Below, piece by piece: positions 1,118-9,800 of a DNA stretch of 64,000 nucleotides. Position 1 is the stretch's first letter, and each line of letters begins with the position of its first letter. Origin of the DNA: Guillardia theta CCMP2712. Its lineage: Eukaryota; Protista; Cryptophyta. The position numbers and the translations under genes are program-made. The notes beneath the pieces are model-generated. The model was not told where the DNA came from, searched no databases, and saw nothing but the letters and a program-made list of their open reading frames with translations. Location: NCBI RefSeq assembly GCF_000315625.1, contig NW_005434672.1, positions 775,374 to 839,373 of the forward strand. The letters run 5' to 3'.

Positions 1118-3635
1118 ATGCTTGCCGATCGATGGAAGGGATTGAGACTCCTATGCTTCATCTTACTCTGGCAAGTCATGCCTGGGGCGCTGACGTCAGT
1201 AGGAAACAACGGCATGGATGGAGGAGAACGGGTCATGTTCGTTTCTAAGATCACAAAACTTGTGCGGCGAGGCCCTCGCATGTTCGCAGTTCTGGACGAA
1301 GACAAGTACCTACCCTTGTCGCACCCTCAGGAATGTCCCCGTCCCCCTGGACTACAATTTGAGGAAGGGCAATGGCTGAAGATTGAGGCTCGCAGGAACA
1401 TGGACGCTTCGAAGAACCCTTGGACATGCACTCGCGTCATTTCTGCAGTTTCTCCGCCCTCCATGACACCTCAGTACATCGATAGACCATGGCAGGGCAT
1501 GAATAATCCTACGGGGATGCTTCCACCGCACGCCGAACCAGCGCAAAACGCCTACCAGCATGGAAAGAATGTGTTCCAGCAGGACGTGGGCGGAGCAGAT
1601 GTAGGCTGGAACGAGGGGCAGCCATTGGGCATGATGCAGCAAAGACCTCACGGGTACCCAGCGCCTGGCAGCGTACCCCAGTACGTCGCACAGGATAATT
1701 ACGCTCCACGTGCAGACATGCCGTCCTTTGTTCCATCACCTGGGAAAAGACCCGCCTCCTCCCTCAACCCAGGCTTCCACAGCGGGGCTCGAATGCCGAT
1801 GGGGCTCCGGGGCAGCATGCAGTACGGGGAAGGATCGTTGCAGCCGGTGAAGATGCACAGAGGGAAGTCTTGGGACTCCGGAGGTTACAGGCAGCCGACA
1901 GAGGAAATGTTGGCCGAGGATATAAAAACGTGCCGCAAGTACATGGACCTGATTAGATGCCTCGATAGTTACTTTGCCTCTTCTCCCATCAGCGATCTGA
2001 GCAGCGGGATGGCCTCCCAGATCATTTACAAGATTTCTTGTTTGCTTGTTGCAGATCATAATACTATCGACAAGAATATCCATCATCACAATACGCAGTC
2101 GTTGATGAGTGCCCTGCTGGAGCGATTGAGGTCAGACACCCTTTCACTCTCCTGCGGTTCTATCTGCAGTGTAACATGGGCAATGGGAAAGATATGGCTG
2201 ACTAAGCTGAAGAAAGGAGCTTATGAATTGCAGGAGAGCATAAAGAAGGCGATGGAAGTTCTCGCAACAGAAATGGTCGCGCGCGACCTGAACACTCTGA
2301 CTAGCCAGCAGCTCAGCATGGCGATCTTTGGAATCGCAAAGTCCGGCCTGACTTCCCCTCGGTTTGCTTCAGTCTTTGAGAAGTGCGAAAAAGTGATTTG
2401 CGAGGGAGGAGTCTCCAACTACTCCAATCAGAACCTTGCGAACATGGTCTGGGCGTTCGCCTTCTATGGGTACCAGAGCAATGCTGTGATGACGCACATC
2501 GACGATGAGCTTTCCAGGAGGAACATAAGTGCGTTGAAGCCTGCTGAGCTTTCAATGACCCTCTGGGCGTGTGCACGATATCACCATCCATCCAAATGGC
2601 TTTACACTCGTTTCTCTAGTGAGATGAGACAACGAGGGTTCAGCAACTGCTCTACTCAAGAGCTGGCCAACCTCTGCTGGGCATTGACAGAATCAAGCGA
2701 TGAGTATGGTGATCTCGTCTATGATGTTGCACAGGAAGTTTCCTCTCGTCCTGTGAATCCGAGGAATTCCAAAGACATGCGAAACATCCTCTGCTGCATT
2801 GCGAAGAGCAGGGTGCCTGACTGCGGGCTCGCGTCCGAGGTGGCGCGCGAGCTGGAGGCGAGTGGAAGCACCACTTCAGTGCGAGCTTGGATCCTGACCT
2901 TCTGGGCATTCTCGCACATTGCCTTCATACCTTCCAGTGATCTCCAGCAGTCCTTCGAGACAAAGGTGAGGATGCAAGAGGTGCTTGCTGTGCTGAAGTC
3001 TCCTCCAGGTGCAAGGGGATGCGATTTCCAACTCCACAACCTTCCTTTGCAAGGCCCTTCTTTCCTTTGTCAAGCTCCCCCTGAACCAGCCAAGATTGAC
3101 AGACAGGCTTCTTGATTTGATCAACTCCACCATGCCCAATCAGACGGGAATATCCGCCAGCAATCAGCCCCTAAGCTCGGCTCGCAACCTTCCCACTGTT
3201 GAGGACCTTGCGGAGCTGCTCTGGTGTTGTGCCTACCTCCGCCGACTCGAAATGGCGCCGCAAGTGCTTCAGAATCTGTTGCAGCTCATGTCGGCGCAGA
3301 AGATGCAAGGCACGTCGAGCCGCCACCTGCTCATGCTGGTGTGGTCAACCGGCGTGATGCAAGAAGAAGGGTTCGAGCTAGACGCTATGGGAGAGAACAT
3401 ATCCCTTTCTCTCAACGAGCATCGGTTGCTTCTTGGGGAAAGGATCTTGTCTCTTTCCTCTCGTGACTCACTCCTCCGCCTGCTCGCCGTGCTGCTGCCT
3501 TGCACAGAGCAGAGCAAGTCAGTAATGCTGCAGGAGCACCCAGCTATGTCGAGGCTGTGGACTTCCTTGTCTGAGAGCTGGGCTGAGGATGAAGACAAGC
3601 TGAAGCGCTTGCAGTCTCTCCTTGGCTATGCGTGA
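1118..3635 (+). CDS. Octotricopeptide-repeat (OPR)-like helical repeat protein, probably RNA-binding; P/Q/G-rich N-terminus
   Basis: ORFs 1118..3115 and 3009..3635 joined by an intron near 2965-3014. Consecutive 38-aa repeats YSNQNLANMVWAFA, LKPAELSMTLWACA, CSTQELANLCWAL. Confidence 0.75.
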
Positions 3636-3773
3636 GGCGCGGAATTCCCTGGCTGAATGAAGGAAGGCATGACAAAAACATTTTTCCATACTACTGCCGA
3701 GACGAGATGCAGAGGAGCAGCAGCGGAGGGAGCGGAGGGGCGGACGATCGGAGGAGAGAAGGAATGGTGATGT

Positions 3774-6480
3774 CTACAAGTTTTTAACTCTATAAAGGCG
3801 AAGAAGCCAATGCTGGGAGGTGAAGACTTCTTCGAAGTGCTGCAGCGGCTCTTTGCCTCCCTCCGCAACTTCTCCTCTCACCCGGTCGAACCCAGCGGGC
3901 CTGCCGAATTCGGAGACCTGGGAGGAGAAGCGATGAAAGCTCAGGCGATAGAGCAGCGAGGAGCGGAAGCGCCGGCTCCCCTCCTTCCCTACCCTCAGCA
4001 CGCCCCCAGCTGAGAGGAAAGCATCCTCCGGCTCCTTCAGCTCTTTCCCAGCTGCCCGCACCATCCAGAGGAATTTGCTGATGTCATCACTGGCGAAGGA
4101 CGTCATCCCCCCGAACCTCACGAGCACAAAATTGACTCCCATGTTCCTGCACCTTGCAGCTGCCTGCTCCCGCGTCACACACCCCTCCCTCTCCAGCTGT
4201 TTCTCACCTCCTCCTCCGGCAACGCCATGATGGCTCCCACTGCTGCAACCTGGGAGAGATTGTAGCCGCTGGCGTCGAGGAAGGTGACGCGGTCGGCGAG
4301 GGATGCGAGCTCATGCCCATGGTCCCACCAGCTCAGCACCCGCGCGTCTTTGTCCGTGTTGTCGCGGATCCACGTCATTCCTTCCTCCATGTCCTCAAAC
4401 CGCGTGCGGTTGCCGTCGCTCTGCTAGAAGGTGAGGAGGGGAGGGGGAGGTGGTGAGACGCTCACCTGCCGCCCCGCAAACTTCAAGGTGGAGGGCGCGT
4501 ACACGACGCTGGTGACCCATGAGCAGTGCCAGAGGAACATGATGAACAGGAAGAAGAGGGCGAGGAGGAGGAGGAGGGCAATGTCCCGGTTCGTCGTGTC
4601 TTCCGTCCCTTTCCTGCTCACTTTCTTGGAAGACTGGAAGCTTTCTCACTCACTAGAGCAAGAGCTTGCAGGTTACCTTCACGTGCAGAAAATTCTTGGA
4701 GAGGAGAGAAGAGGCCCCGATCGCCCCGATGATGCACGCGGCCGGTGCGAAGAGGACGATGAAGCGAACCTTGAGAGCTGAGAGGAATAGACTGGAATGT
4801 GTTCTATCAGGAGAAGGAGGTGACAGCGGAGGAGGATGAAGAGATGATCCTCGAGGAGGAGGAGATGGCAGTGGGCAAGGAGGGGGAGAAGGAGGAGGAG
4901 GAGATGGCAGAGGGCAAGGAGGGGGAGAAGGAGGAGGAGATGGTCACCTTGCAAAGAAGTAGAAGATAAGGAGGAACGATCGCTCGTTAGGCTCTGAGAT
5001 GCAGCGGTAGATACCAAGAGGAGCAAGAAAGAGGAGGCAGTGCAAGTCGAAGAAGAAGGAAGACCACGTCGTCGGCTGATTCTCCGAGACTGATGACGTC
5101 ATCGTCTCGTACGCGCTCGACGCATTCATTGGGAGGATCTGCCGCCAGAGCCCCCCTCCTCCCTCTCCCTCCCCCCCTTCCAGCCACCCTGAAGCGAAAA
5201 ACAGGCACAAGGGGAGCGCTGCTGAGAGGAAGGGCAGCGAAAGGAAGGGCAGCGAACGACCCGCGAGTATCCCAGAGGCCCTGCAGAGGAGGAGGAAGAA
5301 GGCTGCATGGGGGATGGCGTGTTCCCTTGTAAGGATCGAAGGGACATGGCGCAAGAAGAGCTGAGTCGAGCTCATGCCCACCAGGTAGACCACCTGGAAC
5401 GTGAAGTTGAAGTCCGCCGCGTCCAACCTGCACGTGCGGTGACGGGGCAGCGGGGGTGAAGGAAGCATGCCTTACCCCTTGAACAGGAGGAACAGCACGT
5501 AGACGGCGAAGAGGTTGAGGAAGAAGGTATGCTCCTCCCAGCTGATCGCCATGGCAAAGTAGAGGAAGCCCGCGAAGACCGAGGAAAGAGTCCGGTTGCT
5601 CCCCTTCCCTCGAGCGACGTGGTAGAACGCAAAGATCATGCAAGAGCACCCGATGCCGACCCCGTCTAGCACTCCACACTCCGTGCAGGAGAGGAGCGCT
5701 GGGATCACGCTAGAGAAGAAAGCAGCGAGGAGCGCCTCTTCGTCGCGACCGCAGATCTGCACTCATGACGCAGTCAATGCCTTCAAGGCAAATGTTTGGT
5801 ATCGTTAGAGTGCAGTTGGAGCGCACCATCTTTCGTTTCTCCTCCTCCTCCTCCTCCTCCTCCTGTATTCTACTTCTCATTCTCCGCCTCCTCCTCACCT
5901 GTCGTGCGAGACAATACGTCCCTCCAACACATGCTAAAGCAGCCGCTGGCCCCATTAAAACCGCGATGTGCAGAGGTTCGATCGCAAGGGAGAAACGCTC
6001 GACGAAGAAGAGCAGCAGGTTGAGAGCGAGTGCCACACCCGGGTAGCAACTCCTCCCTAGATCTCTTCCTGCAGGGTACCATGTCCTCTCGTCCTGCCTG
6101 AGAGCTCGTCAGAGCGGATCCCGAGCTATCGTGCCATGACTCACCAGTCAGAGGGGCTGAAGGGCTTGTCCTTGATCAGAGAAGCGAGTCGGAAGTGGAA
6201 GTACGACTTCGATCCCTTGAGTTCCCATCCTCTCCTGCCAGCTTCAGTCAGAGAGCTTCGACAAGGTCGAGATCGCGCACCTCAACCACCCTACAAGTCG
6301 CAAGCAACATGCGAGGACCATGATCCCGACCAGGATGCTCCGACGGATCCAAGCTCTAGCATGGTTGTCCTCATGCTCTTTTCCACGTTCTCTCCCTTTC
6401 TCCTTCTCCTTCTCCAACCTCCTTCCTCGTCCTCCTCCTTCTCCTCCTCTTCCTTCTCCTTGCTTCACTGCCTTCGCCAT
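3774..6480 (-). CDS. STT3: STT3-like oligosaccharyltransferase subunit, divergent and probably catalytically impaired
   Basis: Exons give DERTWYPAGRDLGRSCYPG, SVSENQPTTWSSFFFDLH, WIRDNTDKDARVLSWWDHGH, DDISKFLWMVR and EEVFTSQHWLLRLYRVK, colinear with STT3; multi-exon. Confidence 0.9.
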
Positions 6481-6821
6481 CGCAAGTGGCCCCAACCGTT
6501 ACCTTGAATCTACTCAGTGATAACCGTCGGAACATTCTATCAAACGAGGTCTTTTTTTGTTACTTGTGTGGGTTCGCCTCAGAGTAATTCATAGGAGATT
6601 GACAGGGACAGCACCCAGTCCCCCCCCCTTCTGCACCCGCGCACCCAGCCGCGCACCCCGGGACGCATCGAAGGGATCCTTCCGCGGCATGACGGCGAGG
6701 ACGTGGTGTTGGAAGAGGAAGAGGAGGAAGAGGTGAGGCGAGAAGGAGGGAAAGCAAGGTGAAATATACGACTCTCTCGATGGTGATGGAGTGGAAGCCA
6801 CGGGCAAGGGCAGTGACGTGC

Positions 6822-9800
6822 ATGTTGGGGTACAAGAGACTGATTCTCCTTAACCTCACTCTCTCACTTGCTCTGTTGTCGCCGGGCTCCCCCAAGTTGT
6901 CCTCCCCAGACTCTCGCTGGGAAGTTCAGACGGAGAGTGCCGAGAAGGGCAGATGCTTGCTCCCGCTGCTCGCATCGAGACTTCGAGGAGGAATGGACTA
7001 TAACCGGTTCCAAGGCCGGGACGACAGGAGGTTCCCCTATGGCGAGAGGCCTTTCCAGCGGGACATGGGATGGAGCGAGCGCGGGAGAAAGCATCCGAGC
7101 AGTGGGAACAGCATCGCCGTCAAGGGGCTGGTGCAGAGCGTGATCGAACAGAACCTGATCGACTACTTCGATGCCTTCGGTTCTGTCAGCAACGTGAATC
7201 TCCTACCGTCGAATCCTCGGTACCCCTCGAGAATGGCGTACGTGAAGTTCCTGGAGCCAATGGATGTGCTGGCAGCGTTAGATCACGATAGAGACACTCC
7301 CAGTTGGAATGCAGGAAGACCAATCCAGATTATCAGCCAAGACCCGCAGTTCCATGAGAACTTGCGAAGAGAGCAGCAAGAGATTGCGAGGAGGAAACAG
7401 GAAGAAAGCAGGATGCGTGAGCAAGAAAAGCAGAAGACTCATGATGAATCTGGCGGGTATGAAACAATCCCTGGCCTCCTTTTCAACTCTTTCTAAACTC
7501 AAACGGCAGTGCGCGAGCGCCTAGGTTGGTGGGTGATTGGGTACAAGTGCTTTCAAGGTGTATGCCTCTTGTTTTGGAATCCGCAGAGAGTGAGCAGGAG
7601 CAGATCCACAGGTCGATACTACTGGATGAACAAGGTGACCAAGGAAACCTCATGGAATCTTCCTCCCCAAGTCCAAGGTGAACCGCAGCCCCCCCTCCAT
7701 GGGTTTTGACATTCGTTGTACAGCAGAGGAAGCTCAAGAAAGCAAGCCGCCTAAGAAGTCTCAGGGTGCTGTGAAGACCCAAAAATCGTCAGCCCCGAAG
7801 CAGCAGAAGAAATCAGCTCAGACAGAGCCGGACTCGAGCTCGAGCGAAGAGGATGGTTGTGACTCGGAGGTGATGGACGTTGATGAAGCCAATGAGCTGA
7901 TGGTTCGTAGGGTTATCTGGGAGAAGGAGACAGGCAGAAGCTTGCGGAGCTGCCGATGCTTGACCGCGAGCTTGTCTCTTCCCTTCTGCTGAGGTTGACT
8001 GTCTAACTGGTGCTTGCAGATCTTGAGTGAGAGGCTGGAGCAAAAAGAAGCGCGTCGCCAAGAGCGACTGCTGATGAAGGGGACCAGGACAAAGCATGGT
8101 TGTTACGATTGAAACGTGACAATTTTCTTGTGAAGAGATTTTAAGGTGAGGGGCTGAAAACGCCAGCAAAAACAGAAAGTCGAGAGACTCCAAGAACCAA
8201 GCGGAACAAGTCTTCAGCTCCTGAACTTCTTGGCGAAAATGTTATCGGAAAGAAGATCCGTGTCAAAATTGAAGAGGACGGTCAGTGGATGCGCAAGAAT
8301 GGCCTTGTGGTGAAGTCATGTTTTATTTACCATGGCATCCTGAGTTCATGTCTTCCTCAGGTTCAAGTGAAAGAGGTTGATGGGTCTCAACAGCATCGAA
8401 TCGTCTGGAACGACGGAACGGACGATTCCTGGCTGGTGCTCCAGGTTGCTTCCTCTTCCTCCCCTTCTTTCTTGTGCTCTAATTCTGAGTGATTGTAGGA
8501 ACACGAAGTCGAATTCCTCGACCAGGAGCCAACGGAAGGAAGGAAGAAGGAAGCACAGAAGCGACCAGCCAAGTCTCGATCAACCCCCGCAAGCAAGGAG
8601 ACTGTGAGAAGGAAACAGCTCGACGTTGAGCATGGTGCTTGACCCTGTGTGTGATTTGAAATCAATTCTCTTCTTTCTTCTTGTTCCTCCTCCTTGTGAC
8701 GCTAAGCCGATCAAGTAAAGCAATAAAGGAGCTACAGGAGGTGTTGAGATAGCCAGATGTTGTCTTGTTTTCTTGTTGAAGTTTGAGCACTTGAGATCTT
8801 CTTATGTCGCAGCAGACAGCGGGACGAGGAAAAGCTTTGTGCCGCAGAAGCGAACCTTGCAAATCAGGACGGAAGATGTGAAGAAGCCCGGGGGGAACGC
8901 GTCGACGAGTCAAGATATGAACCAACCTGAAAGGAGAAAGGAGAAGGGTAAGTCACGATACGAGCTTTCGGACGACTGATACTATCTTTCAGTTGCCCAC
9001 CCCTATGACCAGTTCTTCGAGAAGTTTCGCATTCGAGACGAGTGTTTCCGACGCATGCAGGAGCACATAAGGAAAAATATAAGCATGCTCCTCGAGACTC
9101 ACGGGTAAGGAGCCTCCAACTTCCCCTTCATCTTATTCTCCCCGGCAGAGAGTCCATGCTCCCTGAGTTCCTCATCACGAACGGAGACTACTCTGTCTTT
9201 GAGATCGAAAAGCGCGTCTTGGAGCCTCCAACAGGTGAGCCTCGCTCGCTCCCTCGCCTCCTGACCCCCATGGGCTAGTGGAGGAGGTGGGAAAGCCTGT
9301 CTCGCTAGAGCAGCACTACCTTACCCCCCTAGAGCGACTCGTCCTTCCTCCTTCGAAAATCGCCAGCAAGGTTGAGAAAGAGATGTCAAAGGTAAAAGAA
9401 TTCTACGGCGTCGAGCTGCGTGACAGGTGAGCTTGCAATTCGCCTTCGTCCCCTTTCACATTCGGGTGACCAGACTTTGGGAATTGTGGAACGAGAACGT
9501 GGTGAAGGGCACAGAAGAAGACAAGAAGTGGAGAGAATGGTGAAGACAGAGAGGAGGAGACTGCTTCTCATCTTCCTCCTCCTGCTAAGGTATGGGGAGA
9601 ACTTCCATGAAATAGAGTCGGACGAAGTTCGGGAGGATGCAGACAGGCTGAGAGTTCGACGAGGCACCGAAGATTGGATCGGCCCCAATGCAATGAGAGT
9701 TGTGAGTTGCCTCCTGCAGCTCCAGCTCCTGCCCTTCTGTCTTCTGATTGTTGTGATTGGTGCAGGAGTCAACGGAAGAGGAGACTCGAGGCTTCTTCGA

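What the first reader, a model, noticed from the sequence alone, without database searches (positions are those of the whole stretch)
3774..6480. Pseudo-STT3: catalytic acidic residues lost, acceptor-binding motifs kept
Seen against canonical STT3 motifs: IHEFDPYFNYR reads LKGSKSYFHFR (Asp to Lys, about 6190-6222); SRSVAGSYDNE reads SCTECGVLDGV (Arg to Cys, Glu to Val); WGGY reads WEEH; WWDYG reads WWDHG; DNNTWNN reads DASGYNL. SVSE, WWD and the DxxK motif (DDISK) are retained and the exons read open. Inference: a catalytically dead or re-specialised STT3 that may still bind N-x-S/T sequons, for example as a scaffold or sequon-reading chaperone.
Basis: partly seen in the sequence, partly recalled or inferred. 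Interest (0 to 1): 0.7.

Follow-up and report, generated by a model that had tools for sequence, protein, structure and literature searches.

The report
Expressed STT3 paralogue lacking catalytic residues
The alga Guillardia theta keeps, transcribes and conserves a third copy of the enzyme that attaches sugars to proteins, but this copy has lost the residues that hold the metal and the sugar donor while keeping those that grip the target peptide, so it is probably a non-catalytic relative whose job is unknown.

Summary
Window 3774-6480 (minus strand) holds a nine-exon gene of about 710 codons. Transcript contigs from three runs show all eight GT-AG introns removed, and no frame in 3000-8000 can encode EFDP or DNE.

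Lost, by alignment to yeast and human STT3:
- D47 to K and E45 to G
- R159 to C
- N167 to G and E168 to V
- G209-G210-Y211 (of the WGGY motif) to E-E-H
- Y519 and Y521 to H
- DNNTWNN to DASGYNL

Kept: D166, the SVSE Glu, R404, WWD and the DK motif.

The genome is Guillardia theta CCMP2712. It also has two STT3 genes with canonical motifs. I found no Ost1, Wbp1 or Ost2.

A metagenome relative (96% nucleotide identity) gives dN/dS 0.36 over 362 codons, the same as the neighbouring gene. A Hanusia phi transcript fragment (69% identity in exon 4) shares C, D-G-A and WEEH. The changes are therefore older than the split of the two genera and are maintained.

Best reading: a selectively maintained STT3 pseudoenzyme whose donor and metal site is dismantled and whose acceptor clamp is intact. 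Loss of activity and peptide binding are inferred, not shown. No orthologue was seen beyond Hanusia, but the searches were exon-limited. Exons were never joined, so no full-length search or fold was done.

The parts
6281..6480 (-). Exon 1: ATG at 6480, Gly/Glu/Arg/Lys-rich cytosolic tail, then TM1 (…CCLRLVGWL)
   Evidence: Joint 6233/6280 in contigs of X1, X2, X4. First in-frame ATG after an upstream stop. Hydrophobic segment at aa 48-66. The 5' end beyond about 6444 is not covered by the long contigs.
6145..6234 (-). Exon 2: EL1 start. LKGSKSYFHFR replaces IHEFDPYFNYR, with Lys (6207-6209) at the place of catalytic D47 and Gly at E45
   Evidence: Joints 6233/6280 and 6096/6144. Register. No EFDP-like coding in any frame of 3000-8000.
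5899..6097 (-). Exon 3: rest of EL1 (WYPAGR = WYPLGR) and TM2-3
   Evidence: pieces 5900-6096. Pfam STT3 17.1 bits. The Hanusia fragment P0278 runs across the exon 3/4 junction.
5476..5756 (-). Exon 4: SCTECGVLDGV (5658-5690) with R159 to C, D166 kept, N167 to G, E168 to V. WEEH (5529-5540) replaces WGGY
   Evidence: Ungapped alignment to yeast Stt3 143-228. Pfam STT3 35.3 bits, above the 24.5 cut-off.
4948..5427 (-). Exon 5: divergent TM8-9 region with a Gly/Glu insert, then EL5 SVSENQPTTW (5064-5093) with the catalytic-loop Glu kept
   Evidence: Glu = STT3A E351.
4677..4791 (-). Exon 6: TM11 with KVRF (4761-4772), so the pyrophosphate-binding Arg (yeast R404) is kept
   Evidence: X4 piece 4677-4791. 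(aligned to STT3A 398-428).
4466..4633 (-). Exon 7: charged loop and last TM (…FLWHCSWVTS…)
   Evidence: Joints 4633/4677 and 4420/4466. Hydrophobic segment. 0 nonsynonymous and 2 synonymous changes against L007.
4208..4420 (-). Exon 8: lumenal domain start. WWDHGH (4313-4330) keeps WWD, with Y519 and Y521 to H. DASGYNLS (4253-4276) replaces DNNTWNNT, and an N-x-S sequon is kept at the yeast N539 place
   Evidence: ungapped to yeast 487-555. 0 nonsynonymous and 5 synonymous changes against L007.
3774..4163 (-). Exon 9 with stop TAG 3774-3776: lumenal domain with the DK motif DDISKF (4071-4088) and the C-terminal FEEVFTS…RLYRVK
   Evidence: E 2e-27 to human STT3B; D582, D583 and K586 kept. Joint 4162/4207.

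Best explanation
This is a real, spliced, expressed and selectively maintained paralogue of STT3, the catalytic subunit of oligosaccharyltransferase (family GT66). It is found in Guillardia theta and its sister genus Hanusia.

It has become a pseudoenzyme.
- The donor and metal half of the active site is dismantled. The Asp that binds both the metal and the acceptor carboxamide is now Lys. The Glu of the DxE metal motif is Val (Ala in Hanusia). The conserved Arg before that motif is Cys. The Tyr that contacts the first GlcNAc is His. WGGY is WEEH.
- The acceptor half is intact. WWD and the DK Lys, which read the +2 Ser/Thr, are kept, as is the EL5 SVSE loop that clamps the peptide. The membrane fold and the C-terminal lumenal domain are also kept.

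N-glycosylation itself is most likely done by the two paralogues with canonical motifs in the same genome.

The likely mode of action is therefore non-catalytic: an ER-membrane protein that can still dock N-x-S/T peptides, or partner proteins, but cannot transfer glycan.

Shown here: gene structure, transcription, the substitutions, their conservation in a second genus, purifying selection on exons 5-9, and the presence of two paralogues with canonical motifs.

Inferred: loss of transferase activity, retained peptide binding, and ER location.
For: Gene structure and expression
- Splicing and expression in three runs from at least three studies.
- No alternative coding for EFDP or DNE.

Residue mapping
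- Ungapped alignments to yeast and human STT3.
- Register of exon 2.
- Roles of D47, D166/E168, R404, Y521, WWD and K586 are taken from the review PMC7226087.

Degree of degeneration
- Of 71 covered columns that are at least 95% invariant in 25 canonical STT3, only 42 are kept.

Selection
- dN/dS is 0.36 on 362 codons against L007. The split is 15 synonymous to 18 nonsynonymous changes, with binomial P = 0.0046 against neutrality.
- The neighbouring gene gives 0.35-0.44.
- Exons differ by 3.0% and introns by 8.8%.
- Exons 7-8 have no amino-acid change.

Conservation in a second genus
- Hanusia phi EP00960_P036755 (P0278) is 69% identical in exon 4.
- It shares C at R159, D-G-A at the DNE place, and WEEH.

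Paralogues with canonical motifs
- C108 is an intact 764-aa ORF identical to GUITHDRAFT_78856.
- C130 carries every canonical motif seen, but its C-terminal part is interrupted by runs of N.

An open frame of about 710 codons at 25-45% identity to any STT3 cannot be a neutral relic.
Against: - No activity, binding or localisation data exist.
- D166, the SVSE Glu and R404 are kept. Two conserved Glu and a His appear in WEEH, and a Lys appears at D47. A rewired, perhaps metal-independent, active site cannot be excluded.
- Selection was measured only on exons 5-9 and against one very close relative.
- The exon 2 register is not statistically supported on its own.
- Expression is low: 3 raw reads in the sampled 6% of X19, and contig depth 5-22.
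- No orthologue was seen outside Guillardia and Hanusia, so the function may be minor or lineage-specific.
Confidence: 0.65

Rival explanations
1. It is a re-specialised but still active GT-C glycosyltransferase. Lys at the D47 place stands in for the divalent cation. The new Glu-Glu-His of WEEH, together with D166 and the SVSE Glu, forms a rewired site. This site might use a different donor (for example a monophosphate-linked sugar) or a different acceptor atom.
For: - D166, the SVSE Glu and R404 are kept.
- The derived residues C, G and WEEH are identical in Guillardia and Hanusia, as expected if they are themselves under constraint.
- From general knowledge, not tested here: basic side chains replace the metal in some metal-independent glycosyltransferases.
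Against: - The position of E168 varies (V in Guillardia, A in Hanusia). That fits a site that no longer matters better than a tuned one.
- Four separate donor or metal contacts are lost together (D47, R159, E168, Y521).
- 41% of otherwise invariant STT3 positions are changed, which is typical of relaxed catalytic constraint.
- Two acidic residues at the WGGY place should repel a pyrophosphate. This is my recollection that PglB Y196 contacts the donor phosphate, and it was not tested.
Confidence: 0.2
2. It is a transcribed relic on its way to loss: a former catalytic STT3 made redundant by the two other paralogues, with no function of its own.
For: - Low expression.
- Heavy loss of invariant residues.
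- Orthologues were seen only in Guillardia, a near-identical metagenome relative and Hanusia.
- Exon 9 alone shows 9 nonsynonymous to 5 synonymous changes.
Against: - An intact frame of about 710 codons across nine exons at 25-45% identity to any STT3.
- All eight introns are spliced correctly.
- dN/dS of 0.36 equals that of the neighbouring gene, with P = 0.0046 against neutrality.
- The frame and the derived motifs are preserved in a second genus at 69-76% identity.
Confidence: 0.1
3. It is an artefact of assembly or of the exon model, and the true mRNA encodes a normal STT3.
For: - The 5' 36 bases of exon 1 lie in a GGA repeat that the long contigs do not cross.
- Exon 2 cannot be placed by score alone.
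Against: - Contigs from three runs join exactly these exons with zero differing letters.
- The Hanusia transcript crosses the exon 3/4 junction in the same way.
- No frame in 3000-8000 encodes EFDP or DNE.
- The metagenome contig L007 has the same exons 5-9.
Confidence: 0.03

Closest known systems
Classical eukaryotic STT3 (yeast Stt3, human STT3A/STT3B; PDB 6c26/6ezn, 6s7o, 6s7t)
   Same: - Same family and layout: an N-terminal multi-TM domain (Pfam PF02516) followed by a C-terminal lumenal domain.
- Same SVSE-type EL5 loop, R404, WWD, DK motif and C-terminal FEEVFTS…R.YRVK.
- Exon 9 scores E 2e-27 against STT3B.
- Identity is higher to this type than to the genome's own paralogues: exon 9 mean 0.39 against 0.28, exon 5 mean 0.26 against 0.18.
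   Different: - D47 to K, E45 to G, R159 to C, N167 to G, E168 to V.
- WGGY to WEEH, Y519 and Y521 to H, DNNTWNN to DASGYNL.
- 29 of 71 covered invariant positions are changed.
- No Ost1, Wbp1 or Ost2 partners were detectable in the genome.
The two other STT3 of the same genome (GUITHDRAFT_78856 on C108, intronless; a second, intron-bearing gene on C130)
   Same: Same family and same genome. These are presumably the working oligosaccharyltransferases.
   Different: - They carry all catalytic motifs that can be read.
- They have the DGNTWNH/SVAEHQ signature shared by 120 of 120 best relatives from many protists.
- In a FastTree of the family that clade is well supported (0.96), and no exon of the pseudo-STT3 falls inside it. 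The pseudo-STT3 is therefore not a recent copy of either gene.
Engineered catalytically dead STT3A/STT3B (WWDYG to WAAYG)
   Same: A precedent that an STT3 without transferase activity can still do something. Dead STT3B still stabilises MAGT1 and supports dengue virus propagation (PMC5516256).
   Different: Those mutants destroy the acceptor-binding WWD and keep the metal site. The natural protein here does the opposite: it keeps WWD and DK and loses the metal and donor side.
Other degenerate STT3 seen here (Logan contig L008, GC 71%; protein P0072)
   Same: Divergent STT3 with altered motifs.
- L008 has HEYEP, AFHPE, WLDYGY and DLSALNPSH.
- P0072 has QELDP and WCDYGY.
   Different: - The substitution patterns are different. 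Both keep an acidic residue at D47 and both alter WWD.
- There is no special similarity to the Guillardia protein beyond family level: 46% in exon 9, the same as classical STT3.

Membership tests
STT3/AglB/PglB (GT66, Pfam PF02516 + PF21436) | Significant match to the STT3 membrane-domain profile | tested here: met
   Exon 4 scores 35.3 bits and exon 5 24.7 bits against the 24.5 cut-off. The six-frame genome hit is 46.6 bits. The Hanusia fragment scores 54.9 bits.
STT3/AglB/PglB (GT66, Pfam PF02516 + PF21436) | Multi-TM N-terminal domain followed by a soluble lumenal C-terminal domain | tested here: met
   Hydrophobic segments are found in exons 1 and 3-7 and none in exons 8-9. Exons 8-9 align to the lumenal domain of yeast and human STT3. 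TM number was not counted rigorously because the exons were not joined.
Catalytically competent OST subunit | EL1 Asp (yeast D47, PglB D56) that binds the metal and the acceptor carboxamide | tested here: not met
   Lys at 6207-6209. There is no acidic residue in the six residues before YFHFR, and no EFDP is encoded in any frame.
Catalytically competent OST subunit | DxD/DxE metal motif (yeast D166, E168) | tested here: not met
   D166 is kept, N167 is G and E168 is V. Hanusia has A at E168.
Catalytically competent OST subunit | EL5 TIxE/SVSE Glu (STT3A E351) | tested here: met
   SVSE at 5082-5093, aligned to STT3A 348-351.
Catalytically competent OST subunit | Donor contacts: Arg on TM11 (yeast R404) and Tyr after WWDYG (yeast Y521) | tested here: inconclusive
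   The Arg is kept (KVRF). Y521 is His. So one of the two is met.
Catalytically competent OST subunit | WWD motif and DK motif that read the +2 Ser/Thr | tested here: met
   WWD = yeast 516-518. DDISKF = D582, D583, K586.
Catalytically competent OST subunit | Transfers glycan from a lipid-linked oligosaccharide to Asn | not testable with these tools
   Needs an enzyme assay or complementation.
Pseudoenzyme (inactive homologue kept by selection) | Clear homologue of an enzyme family with essential catalytic residues replaced | tested here: met
   See the rows above. 29 of 71 covered invariant positions are changed.
Pseudoenzyme (inactive homologue kept by selection) | Expressed as a correctly processed mRNA | tested here: met
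   Eight introns are removed in contigs of three runs. There is also a Hanusia transcript fragment.
Pseudoenzyme (inactive homologue kept by selection) | Purifying selection on the coding sequence | tested here: met
   dN/dS 0.36, P = 0.0046, on exons 5-9 only. Exons 3-4 are 69-76% identical to Hanusia at protein level. Exons 1-2 were not tested.
Pseudoenzyme (inactive homologue kept by selection) | Active paralogue present to carry the ancestral reaction | tested here: met
   C108 (a complete 764-aa ORF) and C130 carry the canonical motifs. Their activity is assumed from sequence. C130 is partly masked by runs of N.

The most novel reading that the evidence does not exclude
It is a natural 'sequon reader': an STT3 that has shed glycan transfer but kept the N-x-S/T clamp. 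It would bind sequons on unfolded chains in the ER lumen without modifying them. It might shield sites from the two active STT3s, or hand clients to another route. In a cryptophyte that route could be import from the ER lumen into the complex plastid, or ER-associated degradation.
Probability: 0.15. Interest if true: 0.8.

Novelty: new variant of a known kind. Interest (0 to 1): 0.55.

Why it matters
STT3 is among the most conserved enzymes of eukaryotes, and its active-site residues are treated as invariant.

Here nature has performed a separation-of-function experiment. It keeps the acceptor-peptide clamp, dismantles the metal and donor site, and maintains the result under selection. The resulting protein could serve as a tool or model for sequon recognition without catalysis. 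It also points to a non-catalytic role for OST subunits, of which only engineered examples were found in the searched literature (PMC5516256).

The finding also refines the count of 'three Stt3' given for Guillardia theta (PMC4973528). Only two of them look like enzymes, in a lineage that seems to lack the accessory OST subunits.

The case is limited. It is known so far from two sister genera, at low expression, and with no functional data.

Tried and rejected
Step left out
- Exons were never joined into a spliced protein. All searches went exon by exon by reference. No full-length search, Pfam score or structure prediction was done.

Exon 5 search
- Exon 5 was searched against 1.84 billion cluster representatives. 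Only canonical STT3 matched, at the SVSE region, plus one spurious repeat protein (P0001).
- The search did not return the Guillardia protein itself. A blank there says little about orthologues.

Exon 8 search
- Exon 8 was searched in metagenome contigs. All 17 loci were fetched through the shared pattern DARVLSWW; those that read on carry DGNTWN-type or other canonical motifs. None has WWDHGHE.

Attempt to reach full-length relatives
- I aligned the exons as separate rows to a long backbone. MAFFT scattered the fragments and the alignment was unusable, so it was not searched.

Trees
- IQ-TREE timed out.
- In the FastTree with exon rows the exon rows sit on long branches near the root. Only their exclusion from the DGNTWNH clade is used. 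The grouping of exon 9 with L008 is not trusted, because it involves non-overlapping fragments.

Other checks
- Exon 2 against the PDB gave no hit at E 10.
- The look-up of encoding contigs for the Hanusia fragment found nothing on record.
- Literature searches for a natural inactive STT3 found none. The library is limited to open-access papers.

Ideas considered and set aside
- A scaffold of a multi-subunit OST: no partner subunits were found.
- A recent duplicate of a paralogue in the same genome.

Full report
**What is there**

On the minus strand of window 3774-6480 lies a nine-exon gene. Three-frame translation and exon mapping gave a provisional model. Transcript-derived contigs from three public runs (X1, X2, X4, from different studies) then fixed it.

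The exons are 6480-6281, 6234-6145, 6097-5899, 5756-5476, 5427-4948, 4791-4677, 4633-4466, 4420-4208 and 4163-3774. They are separated by eight GT-AG introns of 43-156 bases. All eight introns are missing from the contigs, with no differing letters.

The runs are labelled only 'RNA? (a guess)'. Contigs that lack all introns of a single-copy locus can only come from mRNA. Contig depth is 5-22, and the raw-read run X19 gave three reads in the 6% sampled, so expression is low.

The long contigs stop in the GGA repeat of exon 1. The ATG at 6480 is therefore inferred: it is the first in-frame ATG after an upstream stop. The exons sum to 707 whole codons plus three split codons.

**It is an STT3**

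- Pfam PF02516 is hit above its cut-off by exon 4 (35.3 bits) and exon 5 (24.7 bits), and PF21436 is hit weakly by exon 8.
- Against solved structures, exon 9 scores E 2e-27 (human STT3B), exon 8 2.7e-15, exon 5 1.6e-10 and exon 4 3.6e-6.

**The motifs**

Ungapped phmmer alignments give direct residue equivalences.

| Exon | Equivalence |
|---|---|
| 4 | position + 135 = yeast Stt3: C = R159, D = D166, G = N167, V = E168, WEEH = W208-Y211 |
| 5 | SVSE Glu = STT3A E351 |
| 6 | KVRF Arg = STT3A R405 (yeast R404) |
| 8 | position + 485 = yeast: WWDHGH = 516-521, DASGYNLS = 534-541; an N-x-S sequon stays at N539 |
| 9 | DDISKF = D582, D583, K586 |

Exon 2 is too short to score alone. Local alignments place YFHFRLASLIKDKPF on YFNYR…GF of three canonical STT3. 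The flanking anchors LRL (TM1) and WYPAGR fit with at most one residue of slack. This puts Lys at D47 and Gly at E45. In any register no acidic residue lies within six residues upstream of YFHFR. No frame of 3000-8000 encodes an EFDP- or DNE-like motif.

According to the review PMC7226087:
- D47 binds both the metal and the acceptor carboxamide.
- D166 and E168 bind the metal.
- R404 binds the donor pyrophosphate.
- Y521 binds the N-acetyl of the first sugar.
- WWD and K586 read the +2 Ser/Thr.

The pattern here is therefore one-sided. Donor and metal contacts are mostly gone: D47, E168 and Y521, plus R159, whose PglB and AglB counterparts lie in the metal sphere. Acceptor contacts are kept: WWD, DK and the EL5 Glu.

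Of 71 covered columns that are at least 95% invariant in 25 canonical STT3, 42 are kept and 29 changed.

**Genome context**

The intronless ORF on contig C108 is 100% identical to GUITHDRAFT_78856 of Guillardia theta CCMP2712, which identifies the genome.

A six-frame Pfam scan finds exactly three STT3 loci:
- C108 is a 764-aa ORF with all motifs canonical.
- C130 is intron-bearing and every motif that can be read is canonical, but its C-terminal part is interrupted by runs of N.
- The third is this gene.

This matches the '+++' for Stt3 in Lombard 2016 (PMC4973528, Table 1). That table also lists no Ost1, Ost2, Ost3/6, Wbp1 or Swp1 for G. theta. My own scans found no Ribophorin I, OST48 or DAD, and only sub-threshold thioredoxin-like hits for OST3/6. 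The caveat is that these are exon-by-exon six-frame searches with no eukaryotic positive control.

**Origin**

The 120 best relatives of C108 all carry the signature DGNTWN(H/M/F), and most carry SVAEHQ. They come from many protist groups. Plant- and animal-like STT3 carry DNNTWNN and SVSEHQ.

The pseudo-STT3 has SVSE. It is more similar to the classical type in exon 5 (0.26 against 0.18), exon 6 (0.31 against 0.23) and exon 9 (0.39 against 0.28), and equal in exons 3, 4 and 8.

In a FastTree the DGNTWNH clade is supported at 0.96 and none of the exon rows falls inside it. The rows otherwise sit on long branches, and I draw no further conclusion from the tree. The gene is therefore an old, fast-evolving lineage, probably derived from a classical-type STT3, and not a recent copy of either working paralogue.

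**Orthologues and selection**

*Close relative (L007).* A word search with exon 9 found P0151 (92% identical) on an ENA marine metagenome contig (L007, 3722 bases). That contig is about 96% identical in DNA to window 1421-5154 and holds exons 5 (part) to 9 with the same introns.

- Exons differ at 3.0% of sites. Introns differ at 8.8%, plus a 37-base gap in intron 5.
- Nei-Gojobori counts over 362 codons give Sd 15, Nd 18, dS 0.061, dN 0.022 and dN/dS 0.36. The probability of so few nonsynonymous changes under neutrality is 0.0046.
- The neighbouring gene gives dN/dS of 0.35 and 0.44.
- Exons 7 and 8 have seven synonymous and no nonsynonymous changes. Exon 9 is looser, with 9 nonsynonymous and 5 synonymous changes.

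*Second genus (Hanusia phi).* A word search with exon 4 found a 134-aa fragment of Hanusia phi (EukProt EP00960_P036755).

- It runs across the exon 3/4 junction as in the spliced Guillardia mRNA.
- It is 76% identical over the 34 aligned residues of exon 3 and 69% identical in exon 4.
- It has C at R159, D-G-A at the DNE place, and WEEH.
- The key changes therefore predate the split of the two genera and have been kept since. The E168 position itself is free to vary between V and A.

*Wider searches.* No more distant orthologue appeared in the exon 5 search of 1.84 billion representatives or in metagenome contigs. These searches are weak evidence of absence. The first did not even return the Guillardia protein, and the word search cannot see full-length proteins from an exon-sized query.

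**Interpretation**

The best-supported reading (0.65) is a maintained pseudoenzyme. It has the STT3 fold and the peptide clamp, and a disabled metal and donor site. It works beside two STT3 with canonical motifs in a lineage that seems to use STT3 without accessory subunits.

Engineered dead STT3B still has non-catalytic functions in human cells (PMC5516256). Those mutants, however, kill WWD, which is the opposite of the natural pattern here.

A rewired active enzyme (0.2) is not excluded. It would use Lys instead of the metal and new acidic residues in WEEH.

A functionless relic (0.1) fits poorly with the open frame, the correct splicing, the dN/dS and the conservation in Hanusia.

An artefact (0.03) is contradicted by independent transcripts and a second genome.

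**Limits**

- Selection is measured only on the C-terminal half, and against one close relative.
- Activity, binding and location are untested.

I found no description of a natural STT3 of this kind in the searchable literature. That library is open-access only.

Noticed in passing
G000 contigs C108:11715-12914 (L001 ORF 1441-3735) and C130 about 139-143 kb (L006, minus strand): There are two STT3 genes with canonical motifs in the same genome. One is intronless (764 aa, = GUITHDRAFT_78856). The other has many short introns. Both carry the DGNTWNHEH/SVAEHQ signature that 120 of 120 best relatives from diverse protists share. The C-terminal part of the C130 gene is interrupted by runs of N.
   Followed up: partly
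L008:3-2241 (Logan SRR15274653 contig, GC 71%): This is another degenerate STT3, from an unrelated GC-rich organism. It has HEYEP for HEFDP, AFHPE for SYDNE, WLDYGY for WWDYGY and DLSALNPSH for DNNTWNNTH. A frame break lies between 1622 and 1675. Divergent STT3 paralogues with altered motifs may be commoner than assumed.
   Followed up: partly
P0072 (669 aa): This STT3 has QELDP, a normal FDNE, WCDYGY in place of WWDYGY, and DNAAWNST. Of 81 invariant positions, 17 are changed. The source organism is not known.
   Followed up: no
G000, whole genome: Six-frame Pfam scans find no Ribophorin I (Ost1), OST48 (Wbp1) or DAD (Ost2), and only sub-threshold OST3/6-like hits. This agrees with Table 1 of PMC4973528. 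Guillardia may run STT3 without the usual accessory subunits.
   Followed up: partly
window 1118-3635 (+): A convergent neighbour gene (ORFs 1118-3115 and 3009-3635) has no Pfam match. Its transcript contig overlaps the 3' end of the STT3-like gene (3400-3798) at about 15 times higher depth in run X1. It gives dN/dS 0.35-0.44 against the metagenome relative.
   Followed up: partly
window 4792-4947 (intron 5) and 6386-6463 (exon 1): Intron 5 is a CCTCC-rich tandem duplication. It is 13% diverged and 37 bases shorter in the relative L007. Exon 1 encodes a GGA-repeat Gly/Glu/Arg/Lys tail that read mappers skip as a repeat.
   Followed up: no
window 6759-7496 (+): This ORF has an RRM_1 domain (25.5 bits) and lies divergent from the STT3-like gene. 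The shared upstream region is about 280 bases.
   Followed up: no
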